A stretch of 63,998 nucleotides of DNA, filler included, from Hyphochytrium catenoides (lineage: Eukaryota > Protista > Hyphochytriomycota), in assembly GCA_900088475.1 (NCBI GenBank). It is 7 parts of 7 records of this genome, joined end to end, with 100 filler letters (N's around TTAATTAATTAA, not from the genome) between each part and the next. Parts side by side here need not be neighbours in the genome. Positions count along the whole stretch, not along the records: positions 50,491 to 60,383 come from FLMG01000918.1; 6 more parts are not named here. One strand, given 5' to 3'. Both the position numbers and the translations under genes were made by a program. The notes under the pieces are model-generated. The model was not told the DNA's origin, made no database searches, and worked only from the letters and a program-made list of their open reading frames with translations. The stretch's first letter is position 1. Each line of letters begins with the position of its first letter. Positions 50,372 through 60,383 of this stretch are shown here, in pieces.

Positions 50372-51140
50372 CTCTCTCTCTTTGTCCCTCNNNNNNNNNN
50401 NNNNNNNNNNNNNNNNNNNNNNNNNNNNNNNNNNTTAATTAATTAANNNNNNNNNNNNNNNNNNNNNNNNNNNNNNNNNNNNNNNNNNNNGAGGTACGGA
50501 GGCTTTGCCGTGCTGCCTGCTCCTGCTGCAGAGATTTTGCCCAGCCAATCCTCAGAAACTCCCGTCACTTCTGTTCCGTAAGGAAGATCTCATGATTGAG
50601 TGGGTGTTGAGTTTGGAAACCAGGAACACAATGACGGACTTCAGAAACCCACACCTCTTTTTTGTCTGAAACGATGTGGCCGCCTTTCCTACAGGAGGTT
50701 TTGGAGATTGATGACGGTTCGTGGCAAGTCAAAAAAGAGTGAGAGAGAGAGACAAAGAGAGAGACACCTAGAGACAGAGCGACAGAGAGAGACAGAGAGC
50801 GACAGAGAGAGAGAGAGAGAGAGACAGAGACAGAGAGAGACAGAGAGTGAACAGAGAGACAGAGAGACAGAGAGAGACAGAGAGAGAGAGACACCGAGAG
50901 AGAGAGAGAGAGACACAGGCAAAGGTAGTTAAGAGACCAGGAAGGAAAGAGAGCGAAGAGAGAAGAGGTAAGAGAAAAGGCAGAGACGAGTAACCAAGAG
51001 GCCAAACGAGACAGATACGGCCAGAGAAACAGCGCTGACGCAGGCAACACAAAGGTTAGAGATCGCTACTACTGACTTAGTACAGCGCTTATCTCTCTCT
51101 CTCTCTCTCTCTCTCTTTTTCTCTCTCTCCCTCTCTCACT
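45356..51140. repeat. Second dense (CT)n/(GA)n microsatellite field (DNAAF5 introns and beyond)
   Basis: Directly visible, including (CTGT)n and (GAGACAGA)n variants. Confidence 0.95.
45623..50316 (+). CDS. DNAAF5: Dynein axonemal assembly factor 5 (HEATR2)-like HEAT-repeat protein, internal exons only
   Basis: Exons encode RPLLSLVSSDPVEKCRELAL, LKRVALDGVPLVRKEVVSLSSLWL...ILPLLLGGLADESEEIQ, RSASVLRVIILITGDRVQPFIENILA|TLSRTCRDEKAEVSAAV...VEPNVTLTIL and GLVLVRAAVQG, in the order I recall for HEATR2. Both ends lie at spacers. Confidence 0.75.
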
Positions 51141-51331
51141 CCCCGCAAAGACTTGAGCTTTCATGGGCTAAGCGGCAGGAGAAGCAGCCACTGGACACCA
51201 GCACTAGAGGACCTTAAGTAGGGTGTTAGCAGTACGCTGACCCGATCGCCAAAGAGCAGAAGGCGCAGGGCAGAACTAGGTTGAGCACATTTGGTGTGAG
51301 GCAGGACGAGCTAACGCTCGTGGCCCGAACC

Positions 51332-51850
51332 ATGAAGGCTCTATTGGCCTTTGTTCTCTCTGTCTCTCTCTTCCTTGTTGTCCAAGGGACTACTGTCTTT
51401 GGATCTCAAAGCCTGCAGCAAACAGAGAGGAAGAGCTACGAAGATCAGTTGCAGGATAGAGCGCAGAAACTCAGTGATAAGATTGGCCGCACGGCCACCT
51501 CGAGCAACAGAATGAGCAACGACATCCGCCAGTGCATTGATGCCGCTCTCACATCCTTCAATGAGCAGTATTTTCAGCTTAACGTCGCTCTAAGAGAGGG
51601 AGGAGCAGGACAAGAGCCATCAGAGGACACCAAGAAGAAGGTAGAAGGTATTCTAGCGACGATGGAAGGACTGGAGAAGAAGGCAAGAGACTGCAGAGGA
51701 GGCCAAACTCCTCCTCCTGCTCAGGACACTGGAGGGGCTTGGGACTCTGCAGGGAACCTAAGAGACCACCCAGGGATTCTCTCATTGTTGAAAGCGGCAA
51801 GACAAAGGAAGATGAGACAATTCCAAAGCGAGAGTGAGGAGGAGGAGTAG
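51332..51850 (+). CDS. Small secreted helical protein of unknown function (172 aa), intronless
   Basis: Signal peptide MKALLAFVLSVSLFLVVQG, an amphipathic helical body with two Cys, and an acidic ESEEEE terminus. The ORF is non-repetitive. Confidence 0.7.
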   Translation: MKALLAFVLSVSLFLVVQGTTVFGSQSLQQTERKSYEDQLQDRAQKLSDKIGRTATSSNRMSNDIRQCIDAALTSFNEQYFQLNVALREGGAGQEPSEDTKKKVEGILATMEGLEKKARDCRGGQTPPPAQDTGGAWDSAGNLRDHPGILSLLKAARQRKMRQFQSESEEEE

Positions 51851-52123: not shown

Positions 52124-55100
52124 CTAACCAAAGATAATCGAGCTCTGGCCTACTCCCTCTCTTCCTCTGCGGCGAGGGGTATCCTTGACAGTCGATCCAG
52201 GAGGAAGAGAAGTGCCCGCAGCGGGCCTGGTTGGGGTGGGCTCTAAAGAAGACACGTGAGGGAGGAGAAGGCGACAAGAATGCAGTAGTAAGCAGGAGCC
52301 AAACGATAACCTAGATAAGGCACAACCCTTGGGAACATTGCGCGCGAGGACGAAAAGACAGCTCATCAGGGAAGGCCTCAGCTGCCTGACAAAGAGCCGT
52401 GGTCCAGCTATGGCGAAGCTGTTGTCACAGATAAGCTAAAAACAGCCTTACCCTGGACTTGGTCCTTCGTGGTGTCTACGGACCCAGCGAGCTCAATCTT
52501 GGCAACGCCGATACCTTGAGCGTTGAGATTGTGAGTCATAGCCTGAGACACAAAGGTCATAGAGAAGACATCAAGGGTGAGAGATGTAGTCGCCCTCTAT
52601 AGAATGACATGGAGAAAAAGCCGGAAAGGTATGGCCAGCTATGTCTGGGACGAAGAAGGGTTGAGGATCTCTTTTCTATCGCCCGAAGATCCTTTCCCTA
52701 TCCTTCCTATGCGTTCGTTCCATGTCGAGCCTTTCTAATTTGTCTACCTCTCTATCAGTCTTCCTGATATTGATATCGTCCTTTATCTCCTGCACTGACT
52801 GGGTGCCATCAGAGTGCGTCACAAGCACTCTTCTGCAAGTAGAATTCTCGCACCATCCCTCTCCGCCACTAATATGCCAAGCGTTGCGGATCATCAGCTC
52901 AAAATAGTCGTCAGAGTCAATAGACGCGCTAATGTTAGCATAGTAACTAGCGAACTCGTCCATTGAGACCTGTGATAAAAGAAAGAAAGGGAGAAGCAAT
53001 ACTCAGATTAGACGAAGGAGCTGAAGAAAGAGAGTAGAAAGGGCGAAGCAAATGGCGAAGAAAGAGGATGGTAATCCTTTTACGCATGACAATGAACGGC
53101 AGCTCGGAACTTGTGAATTGAGCGAAGTAGGAGAGAATAGTGAGCCCTTACGCTTCGACTTCTTGCTAATATAGAGGAAGAGAAGGGACACGGTGAAGAA
53201 TAAAAGGAGAGATGCTTGGAGAGGAAGAGAGACAGACAGACAGAGAGCGACACACGTGGAGATGGACTAGAAGAAACTCCACCTTGCCATCCTTCTCATT
53301 CGACCCATCAAGAAGATCTAAGAACTCTCTAAAGACTTGAGCTTGGGTCCTGGTCCCTGCCAAGACATCGGGATGCTGGCTGGCATCGTAGCGAGGCACA
53401 ATGTCCGCTACATCGAGGACCTGGAAAAATGTGATGGCAACCAGGGATAGAGGAAGAGAAGCGAGAGTGAGTTCACCAAAAGATAGAAATACAAGGAAGC
53501 AGAAAAATCAGAGAGATACACAGTGCAAATGGCCTAAGACCGCTAAGTGATATAGAGCAAGAGAGGGCATACTTGAAAGGAAGGTAAAAAGAGAAATAGA
53601 CTAAGATGAACTGAGACAGCCAGAAAACTGTGAGTTGGAAGAGCAAGCACACTGGGGAGACCTACCCCGCTCTTATCCACATCAATGACACCGAAAGCCA
53701 TCTCGACCAGCCTCCTGCGGCGCTCATTGAGATCACCCTGGTTGGCAGTGTGAGCGAGTGTGCGGATAAAACTTAAAGCTTTCCGATCTTCCAGCTCTTT
53801 CTTAGCTCATTCCGCCACGCATTCTCCTTTGTCTTTCTTCTCGAAGCAGCCTCCGCTTCTTTATCTCGCTATCTCTTTATCGCACTCCTTCCATATGTAC
53901 AGTCCTCGTCCCGCTTAGGCTGCCTTTAAGCGATCTCTTACCCGAAGGCCGAAAAGGAATTCATCATAGCTGATCGTCCCGGACTTGTCCTTATCGAAAT
54001 AGTTGAAGAGTCCTTGCACTTGCTGTCCACAAGGAAAAGTGAGGGAAGGAGATAGAGGGCAACGATATTAGCCTCCATAAGGAAAGACTCTTAAAAGAAA
54101 ACGCAGAGGTCGTCTTCGTCGCCTGATAGAGCTTCCGAGGCAGCGCACCATGAAAATAAACAAAGAAAGGGTGACAGACAGCAAGGAAGAGACTCGGACA
54201 ACGGCGCTATGTCCGGCCCTGTGGCGCGCTTACCGCGTCTGAGTACTTCAACATATGCTCCTTCGTGGCCTTCTTGAACTCCATGAGGTTAAGAGACTTG
54301 CTTCCGTCGTCATCCATGATCCTGAATTTCTTCGCCAGGCGGATAATCCCACTAACAGCCCCAAGCGCCAAGATCGAGGGGGCCAATCGGAAGAAGAACG
54401 AAGACAGAGTGATGATGACGGGCACTGGGTAAGTAGACTAGAGCTAGACCTAAAGCGTAAATAGATAGAAAGATAGACGCTGTGGAAGACAAAAAGTGGG
54501 CACGCTGAACAGATAGAGGAGCCATGGATATAATTAAGATGCTGAAAGAGCGTGACACACTAGCTAGCGGAAGAGAGACAGACATTGAAGAGGTTACGTA
54601 GAGTGACATGAGTCTTACCTCGCGCCGTGCTGCAGAAGTGATGCTTTGAGAGAGCTTAACAGCTCTTTAACAGAGGCAGGAGCGTTCTCCATTACGGAGG
54701 AAGTGGAGTGAGAGAGTGACGAAGAGGCACTGCTATCGATAGCTCTTGCGCTCTGCGTGTAGCTCTTCTTACTCATCCTCGCAAGTGAAACCGCGTTGGA
54801 CACCCATTCTTTGGCTAAGCCCGTGTTCAGCTTACTTCTTGCATCTCCTTCGCTGCTACCAGAAAGTAAACCGTAGATAATGGGGACAGGCGAGGCCACG
54901 CTGAGCTTCACTAACTCCTAGGGGCGGATACAATGGTTAGTGCTACACTCAGAAACGGATGCAGAGAAGCCCAGGTGGATAGGGGAACGCCTCTTAAAGT
55001 TATGGACCAGGAGCAGACAGCAGTTTAGAAGGAATGGAGGCAGAGAGCCCCACCTAGGCTTGTGTTCTCTCTATTCTCTCCATCTTCTTCCCTGTGCCTC

Positions 55101-56088
55101 TCTCATTTCCTCTTCTTTCCTGTCCTCATCTCTACCCTTTCCCTTCTCTCTCTCTCTCTCTCTCTCTCTCTTTAGTCCGACCCGTTGTCTATCTCCCTCA
55201 TCCTCTTCGTTAGCTCTCCTCAACAGATCAGACTTACCTTTGTCACCGTCTTGGCCATGACCTCTGCCAGCGGAGAGGAGGATGGAGAGATGAAGGTCCC
55301 AATGGCAATCACGCCGTCGGTGGCTCCTGCCTTAACGAGGTGGCTAGCTGCGCCAGGGAGGCCCGCCTCATCGAACACCTGACCAGAGACAAAGGCAACA
55401 AATTGGAGTGGAAAAGTAAGAGACAGAGAGAGAGAGCATATGAGAGAGAGGTCCAAGAGGGAAAACGGATAAAGTGGCCGAAAAGCAGCAGACTCGGAAA
55501 AGAGAGAGACTGAAGCCAAATGGCAGGGGGAAATCAGCAGACAGAGAGCGAGCCAGAGAAAGAGAGACAGAGAGAGAGAGAGGCAAACAGAGAGAGAACG
55601 TCCTGATTCCTCTCTTTCCTTACCTCCAGAATGTTGATACCTGCTGCGTTGGCTCCTAGAAGAGCCTTCGTCACTTGTTGAGTTGCCTCATTGGCTATCT
55701 CTGGCCAGGAAACAGCCTTCAGGACCGTGAAGCGAAGACCCAGAGCAGAAATAGAGGACGGGTTTCCTGTCGATGGAGCCTCAGAACCGCCCGAGGAGCT
55801 GATCATCGGACTGGCTGGGACGACCTCGGCCGCCCCCGAAGCGGCTGGGACGAGGGGAGGAGTCTGAGGAAGAGAAGAGGAAGGAGAGGAAGTGGAAGAG
55901 GTCGAGGGCGGAGCAGTGGAAGTGCGCCGAGGGTCAAACTTGCCCTTTCTGGGAGGCGTCTGGGGCACAGGCTCATTCTCTCCAAAAGAGATGCTGGAGC
56001 CTCCTCCCGGCGGCGCGTGCACGCGAGTGAAGGCGCGCGCAGTGCCGCTCATCTTCTGATTCATCGGAGTGCCGCCAGTGCTGGACAT
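52124..56088 (-). CDS. Fusion protein (581 aa): SPIRAL1-like PPGG motif, lumazine-synthase-like domain, calcyphosin-like four-EF-hand domain, C-terminal GQSSIIFG motif
   Basis: Ten phase-compatible GT-AG exons: 56088-55624, 55378-55238, 54917-54619, 54351-54234, 54022-53942, 53737-53666, 53420-53283, 52969-52748, 52542-52452, 52242-52124 (1746 nt). Calcyphosin motifs GASGIIRLAKKFRIMDDDGS, YDASQHPDV and ISASIDSDDYFELMIRNAW. Confidence 0.88.
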
Positions 56089-57281
56089 TGTGGCAAAGGC
56101 AGGTGGGGGAGAGGCAGAGAAAGAGAGAGAGGTAGGGAAATGGGCAGGGAAGAGAGAGAGGCGGCGGAGAGACGACGGGAATAGCCCTGACCAGCGCAGG
56201 GAAAGGGGGACTGTGACCTGAGGTCCTGAGATAAGGTTGCCTGTTGGTCTTGCACACTGCTGCTTAAGCAGGGAGGAGAAGAGGATGGAGATGATGAGAC
56301 ACAAGCAGTGCATGGAAAGGCAAGGACCAAAAGATCTCAACAGACCTACTGTCATGGATNGTTTCGTGAAATGTTTCAGCTGTATCTCATATATATATAT
56401 AGGAAACTTAATCTTGATTAATTGCAGTTATCCACTTTATGATCCGTTATTTTTGGAGGATCCGCTTGTCAACAAAAGCCTTGCTTTCTGTCGTAGTGGG
56501 AAAAATACTCTCTGTCTCTGTCGCTCTCTGTCTCTCTCTCTGTCTCTCTCTCTCTGTCTGGCTGTCTAGTCAGTCTCCTCTCTCTCTTTCTCTCTATCAA
56601 TTGGTGATAAGAGAAGTGAAAAGAGAGTCCTAGGTAGGCGGCAACAAGCTCAGAGCACTGGTGTCTCGGGCAGTAGAGGCGTCGTCACGCTTGCTTCGTG
56701 GTCTCACTTACCAGGAAGCTTCCTTTCCATTTTGCTCTTCGTCTCTGATCCTTGTCCTCTACGAGCTTTGTCCCTTCTCTCTCTCTCCTGTTTCCCTCGG
56801 CAATCTCTGCTCCCTGCACCTGCCCGACCATCGGTGAAACCTCTTGTGCCTTTGGTAGTTCTATGTTTCTCTTTCTCCCCCTCCCACCTGTTCTACCCCC
56901 CTGTCTATAGGAAGATTGGACTCAGTTGGCTTGAACTTTGAAAAATGGAGGGGAAGTAGGCAGGAGGACTGACGAATGAAAGACAGAGAGAGGAGAGAGA
57001 ATAAGACATCGGAAGAGAACAAGACATGGCAGAGGACTGGGACAGGGAAGAGAGGTTCTTAATGGGTGGAGGAGCGGTCGTCGATTCTTAGACATTTGAG
57101 AAGTATATTTACAAAGTTCTGTGCATGAAGTAAATAAATGAGCGGAAGGAAGGAGAAAGAAGAGGGAGGAAGTGCTATCTCCTGGCATGGGTTCTGCTCC
57201 TCTTGCTCCTGCGTGTCTCTCTCTCTCTTTGATCTCTCGTATGCCCCTCTCCTTCCTTTGCTCCTTTGGTCTCCCGGTTTC

Positions 57282-60383
<3,102 letters not shown>

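What the first reader, a model, noticed from the sequence alone, without database searches (positions are those of the whole stretch)
52124..56088. Lumazine-synthase-fold pseudoenzyme fused to calcyphosin EF-hands: candidate Ca2+-regulated oligomeric scaffold
Seen: ten in-phase GT-AG exons with no internal stop give one 581-aa protein. Exons 1-3 (~55745-54770) encode LGLRFTVLKAVSWPEIANEATQQVTKALLGANAAGINILE|VFDEAGLPGAASHLVKAGATDGVIAIGTFISPSSSPLAEVMAKTVTK|ELVKLSVASPVPIIYGLLSGSSEGDARSKLNTGLAKEWVSNAVSLARM. Exon 3 runs directly into a calcyphosin domain with EF loops DDDGSKSLNLME, DKDKSGTISYDE, DVDKSGVLDVAD and EKDGKVSMDE. Established: the first segment is collinear end to end with 6,7-dimethyl-8-ribityllumazine synthase (RibH: GLRIAIV...VPGAFEIP.AAKKLA.SG.YDAVIALG.VIRG.T.HFDYV...GL..VSL..GVPV.FGVLT...EQA.ER), which forms pentamers, decamers or 60-mer cages; calcyphosin-family proteins bind Ca2+. 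Inference: VPGAFE, IRGxTxH and the phosphate-binding Arg are not conserved, so the domain is probably inactive and kept as an oligomerisation hub displaying five or more EF-hand modules. I know of no functional description of this architecture, though unannotated homologues may exist.
Basis: partly seen in the sequence, partly recalled or inferred. Interest (0 to 1): 0.9.

Follow-up and report, generated by a model that had tools for sequence, protein, structure and literature searches.

The report
Lumazine-synthase-fold calcyphosin fusion, likely microtubule-lumen protein
The gene is real and encodes a dead-looking copy of a vitamin-B2 enzyme fold fused to a calcium-binding calcyphosin module; the same fusion exists in several other protists and carries features seen in proteins that line the inside of microtubules, so it is more likely a microtubule-lumen or flagellar protein than a free oligomeric scaffold.

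Summary
Ten GT-AG exons on the minus strand (56088-52124) give a 581-aa protein. Exons 2 and 3 each hit Pfam DMRL_synthase, and the two hits are collinear. A RibH HMM aligns across the exon 1/2/3 joins at 20.8 bits. No RNA data were available. Instead, an algal contig (L009) carries the RibH-like domain and EF-hands 1-3 in one uninterrupted ORF, 44% identical to window residues 139-501. It spans six of the window's splice joins without a gap. The exon 3/4 join also rebuilds the calcyphosin GASGI motif.

Eleven related contigs were fetched (L002-L011, some of them copies of one another). Those that hold a RibH-like ORF have calcyphosin coding sequence next to it. AlphaFold models of two relatives match only lumazine synthases (Z 14.4). 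RibH's His88 and the Glu of its VPGAxE motif are replaced.

The calcyphosin part is closest to CAPSL, Tetrahymena RIB proteins and trypanosomatid DMIP21, which are all microtubule inner proteins. Both termini carry JPT2-type PPGG-K/G-S motifs, which are reported to mediate microtubule-lumen localisation.

My best reading is a conserved, undescribed microtubule-lumen or axonemal Ca2+-binding protein with a RibH-fold pseudoenzyme domain. Oligomerisation is untested.

The parts
55624..56088 (-). Exon 1 (aa 1-155): start codon, N-terminal PPGG motif, S/P-rich low-complexity spacer, and the first strand-helix-strand of the RibH-like domain (aa ~115-155, 55624-55746)
   Evidence: The N-terminus (M-S-S-T...) parallels the orthologue starts M-S-T-K... 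in L002, L008 and L009. The tblastn match to L009 starts at aa 139 and runs through the exon 1/2 join.
55981..56037 (-). N-terminal JPT-type motif, aa 18-36 (RAFTRVHAPPGGGSSISFG)
   Evidence: Conserved in L002, L003, L007 and L008 as TRRHAPPGG-K/N/V-S/T.... It resembles the JPT2 PPGGK*S motif LNPPGGKSSISFY, which is needed for microtubule localisation (PMC12773733).
55238..55378 (-). Exon 2 (aa 156-202): RibH-like helix 2, strand 3 and the degenerate substrate loop
   Evidence: PF00885 profile 48-85, E 0.13. TIGR00114 14.9 bits. Best PDB sequence hit is Salmonella lumazine synthase 3mk3.
54768..54917 (-). Exon 3, first part (aa 203-252): RibH-like helix 3, strand 4 and the C-terminal helices
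   Evidence: PF00885 profile 88-137, E 0.13. Aligned to the family motif PVIPGI..SSLLEAKG..LA.EW.
54619..54767 (-). Exon 3, second part (aa 253-301): S-rich linker, then the first calcyphosin helix (VKELLSSLKASLLQHGA)
   Evidence: Aligned to LLDKFRETLK in the relatives and to the helix before GASGI in L009's single ORF.
54234..54351 (-). Exon 4 (aa 302-341): GASGI join and EF-hand 1 (loop at 54279-54314)
   Evidence: EF-hand_6 E 0.0016. Loop DDDGSKSLNLME. The join is spanned by the L009 ORF.
53942..54022 (-). Exon 5 (aa 342-368): EF-hand 2 (loop at 53960-53995)
   Evidence: EF-hand_1 E 5e-8. Loop DKDKSGTISYDE.
53666..53737 (-). Exon 6 (aa 369-392): helix and the first half of EF-hand 3
   Evidence: Collinear with L009, L007 and L003.
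53283..53420 (-). Exon 7 (aa 393-438): rest of EF-hand 3, the conserved YDASQHPDV segment, start of the non-canonical EF-hand 4
52748..52969 (-). Exon 8 (aa 439-512): end of EF-hand 4 and the conserved C-terminal extension (WHISGGEGWCENSTCRRVLVTHSDG...)
   Evidence: 62-80% identical to 352 database proteins. Best solved relatives are DMIP21 (9e78_3D, E 5e-19), 9e2g_0T, CAPSL, Tetrahymena CFAP161A and RIB22, and calcyphosin 3e3r.
52452..52542 (-). Exon 9 (aa 513-542): AMTHNLNAQGIGVAKIELAGSVD segment
   Evidence: Conserved in L002, L004-6 and L008 as EAMxxxLxxQGI...I.L.GSVD.
52124..52242 (-). Exon 10 (aa 543-581 plus stop): variable P-rich tail ending in the C-terminal motif GQSSIIFG* (52127-52150)
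   Evidence: The relatives end in GGAATIVLG* (L002), GGKSSVNF (L004-6) and RRQPGGASSLVLG* (L009). This is a JPT-type terminal motif.

Best explanation
The locus encodes one 581-aa protein belonging to a conserved, so far undescribed eukaryotic family. The layout, from N- to C-terminus, is:
1. an N-terminal PPGG-(K/G)-S motif;
2. a lumazine-synthase (RibH) fold domain that has lost catalytic residues;
3. a disordered linker;
4. a CAPSL-like calcyphosin domain with three canonical EF-hands, one degenerate EF-hand and a conserved C-terminal extension;
5. a C-terminal GG-x-SS-x-x-(F/L)-G motif.

Proposed mechanism (inferred): the protein sits on the lumenal face of stable microtubules, most likely the flagellar or basal-body microtubules of a flagellated stage. 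The calcyphosin domain would bind tubulin as CAPSL does, with its EF-hands facing the lumen. The terminal PPGG motifs would add short tubulin-binding anchors as in JPT2. The RibH-fold domain would be a non-catalytic globular module held in the lumen, making protein contacts or binding a ligand.

Shown: the gene model, the domain identities, the fold, the conservation of the architecture and the motif similarity. Inferred: localisation, tubulin binding, Ca2+ dependence and enzymatic inactivity.
For: One gene:
- Ten in-phase GT-AG exons.
- L009 holds PF00885 (E 4e-5, residues 24-134) and EF-hand pairs (residues 185-244) in one uninterrupted 301-aa ORF.
- That ORF aligns to window aa 139-501 at 44% identity, across joins 1/2 to 6/7.
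- The remaining joins and both termini are collinear with L002-L008.

RibH fold:
- Pfam hits in window exons 2 and 3, and the RibH HMM at 20.8 bits.
- The L002 orthologue domain hits PF00885 at E 6.6e-6, and its best PDB sequence hit is 1w19.
- AlphaFold models: pLDDT 72.9 for P0241, and 80-93 over the domain for L009.
- Foldseek's top 50 for both models are all lumazine synthases, cages and fusion constructs built on them, or the related archaeal riboflavin synthase.
- VIA-align gives Z 14.4, against about 10 for the next fold.
- All 100 protein-language-model neighbours carry DMRL_synthase.

Inactive:
- The Glu of VPGAxE aligns to Gly and His88 aligns to Pro.
- The family does not keep RibH's residues.
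- TIGR00114 scores are 15 bits against a cut-off of 84.6.

Microtubule lumen:
- Exon 8's best solved relatives are doublet-microtubule inner proteins.
- The orthologue's EF1-2 region is closest to CAPSL (E 1.8e-18), then RIB57, RIB22 and RIB35.
- CAPSL binds lumenal alpha-tubulin and decorates microtubules in vitro (bioRxiv 10.64898/2026.06.11.731632).
- JPT2's PPGGK*S motifs are required for microtubule localisation, which that study places in the lumen, and they closely resemble this protein's termini (PMC12773733).
Against: - There is no localisation, expression or binding data for this protein or for any family member.
- No RNA run was available.
- The similarity to DMIP21 covers only the calcyphosin C-terminal part. 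The DMIP21 N-terminus did not match the RibH-like profile or the model.
- Pfam JUPITER did not hit exon 1, so the motif resemblance is short and local.
- Human calcyphosin itself is also described as a soluble Ca2+-binding protein.
- The window's RibH-like domain is divergent even from the protist family: 11 bits against the A1 HMM. It lacks that family's GPG and GSGNGS motifs.
- The organism and its life stages are not known to me.
Confidence: 0.55

Rival explanations
1. The RibH-fold domain keeps the pentamer (or higher) assembly of lumazine synthases and acts as a soluble oligomerisation hub that displays five or more Ca2+-binding calcyphosin modules.
For: The fold is that of lumazine synthase, and solved members are pentamers or multiples of pentamers (entry titles name pentameric and icosahedral forms). 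A conserved strand-like segment precedes strand 1 in the relatives (AVEVTEYKVGL). From my knowledge of RibH this could correspond to the N-terminal strand exchanged between subunits.
Against: Oligomerisation was not tested, because no multimer prediction is available. In RibH the active site lies at the subunit interface, and those residues are the ones lost. This removes one reason to keep the interface. The CAPSL-like module and the PPGG motifs point to one-to-one binding on a tubulin lattice, whose geometry a five-fold ring does not obviously match (inference).
Confidence: 0.2
2. The RibH-fold domain is a ligand sensor. It still binds a small molecule, such as a pteridine, flavin or ribityl-type compound or a phosphorylated metabolite, at the old active-site position. 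It would couple that signal to the Ca2+-binding module.
For: In the protist relatives the most conserved positions lie where RibH has its substrate loops: GPG after strand 1, the Gly/Ser-rich D.IGSGNGS loop after strand 3, and PGI.CQSSLLEAKG after strand 4. That is the pattern of a kept binding site rather than a bare scaffold.
Against: The window's protein lacks most of these motifs. It has SWPE for GPG and SPSSSPL for GSGNGS, and scores only 11 bits on the family HMM. No ligand can be named from the sequence.
Confidence: 0.15
3. Gene-model artefact. A RibH-like gene and a calcyphosin gene lie side by side and were joined only on paper.
For: There is no transcript evidence. An in-frame stop follows exon 3 immediately if intron 3 is retained.
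Against: L009 has both domains in one uninterrupted ORF. Eleven related contigs were fetched (L002-L011, some of them copies of one another), and those with a RibH-like ORF have calcyphosin coding sequence next to it on the same strand. The exon 3/4 join rebuilds GASGI. The RibH-like ORFs of all ten relatives end in the first calcyphosin helix.
Confidence: 0.03

Closest known systems
Calcyphosin-like protein CAPSL (PDB 11yj) and calcyphosin (3e3r)
   Same: Four-EF-hand calcyphosin domain with the GASGI helix-loop start. EF1-3 have canonical loops and EF4 is degenerate. The orthologue's EF1-2 region matches CAPSL at E 1.8e-18. CAPSL is a microtubule inner protein that binds alpha-tubulin.
   Different: CAPSL is 208 aa and consists of the calcyphosin domain alone. 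It has no RibH-fold domain, no terminal PPGG motifs, and lacks the WHISGG...CRRV...H.DG extension: it matches only residues 2-32 of exon 8.
Trypanosomatid DMIP21 (9e78_3D, 457 aa) and 9e2g_0T (422 aa), doublet-microtubule inner proteins
   Same: Best solved matches to exon 8, including the C-terminal extension (E 5e-19 and 7e-17). DMIP21 is a 48-nm-periodic lumenal protein.
   Different: Their N-terminal parts gave no match to the RibH-like profile or models. They are not among the 60 best hits listed for the orthologue's EF1-2 region.
6,7-dimethyl-8-ribityllumazine synthase (RibH; PF00885, TIGR00114)
   Same: Same strand-helix order and fold. Sequence similarity is collinear over profile positions 17-137, with Z 14.4.
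   Different: Scores are far below the family cut-offs. His88 and the Glu of VPGAxE are replaced. The domain is fused inside a larger eukaryotic protein. Oligomeric state is unknown.
Jupiter/JPT1/JPT2 microtubule-associated proteins
   Same: Short PPGG-(K/G)-S-S-x-S-F type motifs at or near both protein ends. In JPT2 they are required for microtubule localisation, which that study places in the lumen.
   Different: No overall homology: Pfam JUPITER gave no hit on exon 1. JPT proteins are small and disordered, with no globular domains.
Other calcyphosin fusions in cilia: CAPS2 (DM10 + calcyphosin) and Marchantia MpCAFA (CAPS + FAP115)
   Same: The same theme: a calcyphosin module joined to a second domain in a ciliary protein.
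   Different: The partner domain here is a RibH fold. I found no paper that describes this partner.

Membership tests
Lumazine synthase (RibH) as an enzyme | Score above the curated family cut-offs (PF00885 26.7 bits; TIGR00114 84.6 bits) | tested here: not met
   The window's exons score 12.6 + 12.6 bits on PF00885 and 14.9 bits on TIGR00114. The relatives score 26.5 and 23.9 bits on PF00885. The E. coli control scores 200 bits.
Lumazine synthase (RibH) as an enzyme | Catalytic and substrate-binding residues: Glu of VPGA(F/Y)E, His88 in the GxTxH loop, Arg127 | tested here: not met
   Glu aligns to Gly and His aligns to Pro. Neither is kept in the relatives. The Arg127 position is ambiguous in the alignment.
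Lumazine synthase fold (DMRL synthase superfamily) | Four-stranded parallel sheet with flanking helices in RibH order, and a structural match to solved RibH | tested here: met
   Shown for the relatives P0241 and L009. For the window's own domain it is shown only by sequence, because the spliced protein could not be submitted for structure prediction.
Lumazine synthase fold (DMRL synthase superfamily) | Pentameric or higher assembly | not testable with these tools
   No multimer prediction is available.
Calcyphosin / CAPSL family | Four EF-hands in calcyphosin order, with significant similarity to solved calcyphosins | tested here: met
Microtubule inner proteins (functional class) | Location inside the microtubule lumen, bound to tubulin | not testable with these tools
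   Only indirect evidence: the nearest solved relatives are MIPs and the termini carry PPGG motifs.
Jupiter/JPT family | Match to Pfam JUPITER, or overall homology | tested here: not met
   No Pfam hit on exon 1 at E up to 10. Only the short motif is shared.

The most novel reading that the evidence does not exclude
A former riboflavin-pathway enzyme fold has been recruited as a structural or ligand-sensing module inside the microtubule lumen. It would be tethered there by a CAPSL-like Ca2+-binding domain and JPT-type taxane-pocket motifs. This would define a new, widely distributed class of lumenal protein in which the RibH-fold domain either oligomerises across protofilaments or reads a small metabolite.
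Probability: 0.15. Interest if true: 0.8.

Novelty: new variant of a known kind. Interest (0 to 1): 0.6.

Why it matters
Calcyphosin modules are emerging as building blocks of the protein layer inside ciliary microtubules. A 2026 review of apicomplexan microtubule inner proteins mentions none. I found no paper linking a lumazine synthase fold to calcyphosin, EF-hand proteins or cilia.

If the prediction holds, three things follow:
- A conserved protein is added to the lumenal inventory of protist flagella, including a likely parasite.
- It is a clear case of a metabolic enzyme fold turned into a cytoskeletal pseudoenzyme.
- It extends the JPT2-type PPGG motif from animals to distant protists as a general lumen-targeting signal.

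All three can be tested directly by tagging, microtubule co-sedimentation and cryo-EM.

Tried and rejected
1. phmmer of exon 3 against 1.84 billion representatives gave 0 hits, not even to itself. This genome's proteins are therefore not in that library, and the exon is too divergent.
2. The Atlas search with exon 3 gave only weak thioredoxin-like neighbours (0.77). I dismissed these as noise from a fragment.
3. RNA runs: none was listed, and only three DNA runs hold the locus.
4. Fetching RibH relatives with E. coli RibE returned only sequences at least 84% identical. The local HMM built from them is narrow, but it still scored 20.8 bits.
5. I tested whether the N-termini of DMIP21 and 9e2g_0T are RibH-like. 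There was no sequence match and no structural match among the listed hits.
6. The search for related loci on metagenome contigs with the family alignment found nothing.
7. A mixed alignment (A2) was misaligned, so I discarded it and built A3 instead.
8. The 180-189-aa metagenomic 'calcyphosins' turned out to be ORFs that start at EF-hand 3, not stand-alone proteins.
9. Cluster look-ups gave no organism names.
11. The spliced 581-aa protein has no reference, so it was never sent to Pfam, AlphaFold or the homology searches as a whole. It was analysed only exon by exon and in local scripts.
Full report
**Observation**

The ten exons are 56088-55624, 55378-55238, 54917-54619, 54351-54234, 54022-53942, 53737-53666, 53420-53283, 52969-52748, 52542-52452 and 52242-52124. 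All are flanked by GT..AG. Together they make 1746 nt, or 581 codons plus a stop. Introns are 204-320 nt, and a random run of 581 stop-free codons has a probability near 8e-13. The spliced protein has no reference, so I did not type it into any tool. It was studied exon by exon and in local scripts.

**Is the first domain lumazine-synthase-like?**

- Scanned separately, exon 2 hits Pfam DMRL_synthase at profile positions 48-85 and exon 3 hits positions 88-137. Each scores 12.6 bits at E 0.13, and each hit is that exon's only hit.
- Two independent pieces landing in order on the same one of 24,736 families is far beyond chance.
- Exon 2 alone also scores 14.9 bits on the TIGR00114 equivalog model. 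Its best PDB sequence match is Salmonella lumazine synthase.
- A RibH HMM built locally from enterobacterial sequences aligns spliced residues 150-224 at 20.8 bits (E 1.5e-8 for a single target). The alignment runs straight through the exon 1/2 and 2/3 joins.

**Relatives and the gene model**

No RNA run was listed, and only three DNA runs of one coded organism hold the locus. I therefore used cross-species evidence.

- Exon 8 finds 352 proteins at 62-80% identity. Following one of them gave contig L002.
- On L002 a 171-aa ORF with PF00885 (E 6.6e-6, profile 18-137 of 139) sits directly upstream of the EF-hand and exon-8-like ORFs.
- That ORF finds nine further relatives (alignment A1). All of them end in the first calcyphosin helix.
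- Contigs L003, L004-6 and L008 show DMRL_synthase-like and EF-hand ORFs side by side on one strand. L007 has the same layout by tblastn.
- The decisive case is L009, from an alga with light-harvesting-protein genes nearby. One uninterrupted 301-aa ORF carries PF00885 (E 4e-5, residues 24-134) and EF-hand pairs (residues 185-244).
- L009 aligns to window residues 139-501 at 44% identity. The uninterrupted ORF spans the window's joins 1/2 through 6/7, and the rest of the alignment crosses one short L009 intron.
- Joins 7/8 and 8/9 and both termini are collinear with L002-L008.
This recreates the GASGI motif that starts the calcyphosin domain in the relatives and in CAPSL.

The single-gene model is therefore well supported without transcripts.

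**Fold**

- AlphaFold2 on P0241 with A1 gave pLDDT 72.9 and a strand-helix x4 order.
- On the L009 ORF (alignment A3) the RibH-like part reached pLDDT 80-93. It is followed by a disordered linker and then the EF-hand helices.
- For both models Foldseek's top 50 PDB hits are all lumazine synthases, cages and fusion constructs built on them, or the related archaeal riboflavin synthase.
- VIA-align gives Z 14.4 to M. tuberculosis RibH. Forty-eight RibH-derived entries come before the next fold, at Z about 10.
- AFDB clusters agree. They also include a 747-aa 'EF-hand domain-containing protein' with a RibH-like region at residues 90-239.
- A protein-language-model search returned DMRL_synthase for all 100 neighbours.

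**Active or not?**

- In the HMM alignment the Glu of VPGAxE pairs with Gly, and the His of the GxTxH loop pairs with Pro.
- The relatives do not keep these residues either.
- TIGR00114 scores are about 15 bits, against a cut-off of 84.6 and 200 bits for the E. coli control.
- The Arg127 region cannot be judged from the alignment.
- The protist relatives have their own invariant motifs at the old substrate-loop positions: GPG, SKAL, D.IGSGNGS and PGI.CQSSLLEAKG.LPNL..EW.
- The window's protein lacks most of these motifs and scores only 11 bits on their HMM. L009 is intermediate.

A pseudoenzyme is therefore likely. A retained ligand site in part of the family is not excluded.

**Second domain and likely function**

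- EF loops 1-3 are canonical and EF4 is degenerate.
- Exon 8, with its extension WHISGG..C....CRRV.V.H.DG, is closest to trypanosomatid DMIP21 (E 5e-19). DMIP21 is a 48-nm-periodic doublet-microtubule inner protein.
- After DMIP21 come 9e2g_0T, CAPSL, Tetrahymena CFAP161A and RIB22, and calcyphosin.
- The orthologue's EF1-2 region is closest to CAPSL (E 1.8e-18), followed by RIB57, RIB22 and RIB35.
- A 2026 preprint shows that CAPSL is the main lumenal protein of the transition-zone doublet. It binds alpha-tubulin with its EF-hands facing away, decorates microtubules in vitro and promotes their formation.
- The protein's N-terminus carries HAPPGGGSSISFG. The relatives have HAPPGGKSTFSV, HAPPGGKSSFSF and HAPPGGNTSISFG.
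- The C-terminus ends in GQSSIIFG*. L009 ends in RRQPGGASSLVLG* and L002 in GGAATIVLG*.
- These motifs closely resemble the PPGGK*S motifs of JPT2, for example LNPPGGKSSISFY. In JPT2 they are required for microtubule localisation, which the authors place in the lumen, and they are predicted to sit in the taxane pocket (PMC12773733).
- Calcyphosin modules fused to other domains are already known in ciliary proteins, such as CAPS2 and MpCAFA.

Together these results make a microtubule-lumen or axonemal role the best-supported reading. It remains an inference.

**What is not settled**

- The N-terminus of DMIP21 is not detectably RibH-like, so no solved structure shows this domain in a microtubule.
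- The organism is unknown to me. CT-microsatellite introns and S/P-rich inserts recall cyst-forming coccidia, but that is from memory and untested.
- Whether a canonical ribH exists elsewhere in this genome cannot be seen from a 10-kb piece.

**Novelty**

I found no paper linking a lumazine synthase fold with calcyphosin, EF-hand proteins or cilia. Two recent papers on apicomplexan microtubule inner proteins mention neither term. I rate this a new variant of a known kind: a calcyphosin/CAPSL-type protein with an unreported RibH-fold pseudoenzyme partner and JPT-type motifs, conserved across several protist lineages.

Noticed in passing
window 57282-60100, minus strand: The upstream neighbour is a multi-exon Sel1-repeat protein. 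Several ORF pieces hit PF08238, with E down to 1.5e-15. It looks like a SEL1/Hrd3-type gene.
   Followed up: partly
window 51281-51850, plus strand: A 189-aa ORF with a hydrophobic, signal-peptide-like start (after about 30 residues) and an acidic tail. It has no Pfam hit and may be a lineage-specific secreted protein.
   Followed up: partly
window 50690-50950, 55130-55200, 55430-55620, 56100-56170: Long CT/GA dinucleotide microsatellites fill introns and intergenic DNA. They create many spurious Ser/Leu-rich or Arg/Glu-rich ORFs in the mechanical ORF list.
   Followed up: no
window 52820-52900 (exon 8) and relatives: The extension after EF-hand 4 has a His...Cys...Cys...His pattern (WHISGGEGWCENSTCRRVLVTH). 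The pattern is kept in DMIP21 and in many relatives, but the second Cys is Asn in some metagenomic homologues and the first is missing in 9e2g_0T. It may be a metal site that is not universal.
   Followed up: no
L003 5910-6678 and L007 2211-3041: In two unrelated contigs the divergently oriented upstream neighbour of the fusion gene encodes cNMP_binding domains. In L007 it is followed by protein-kinase ORFs, so it looks like a cGMP/cAMP-dependent kinase. This may be conserved synteny or co-regulation.
   Followed up: no
window 56359: There is a single N in the assembly, just upstream of the gene's 5' region.
   Followed up: no
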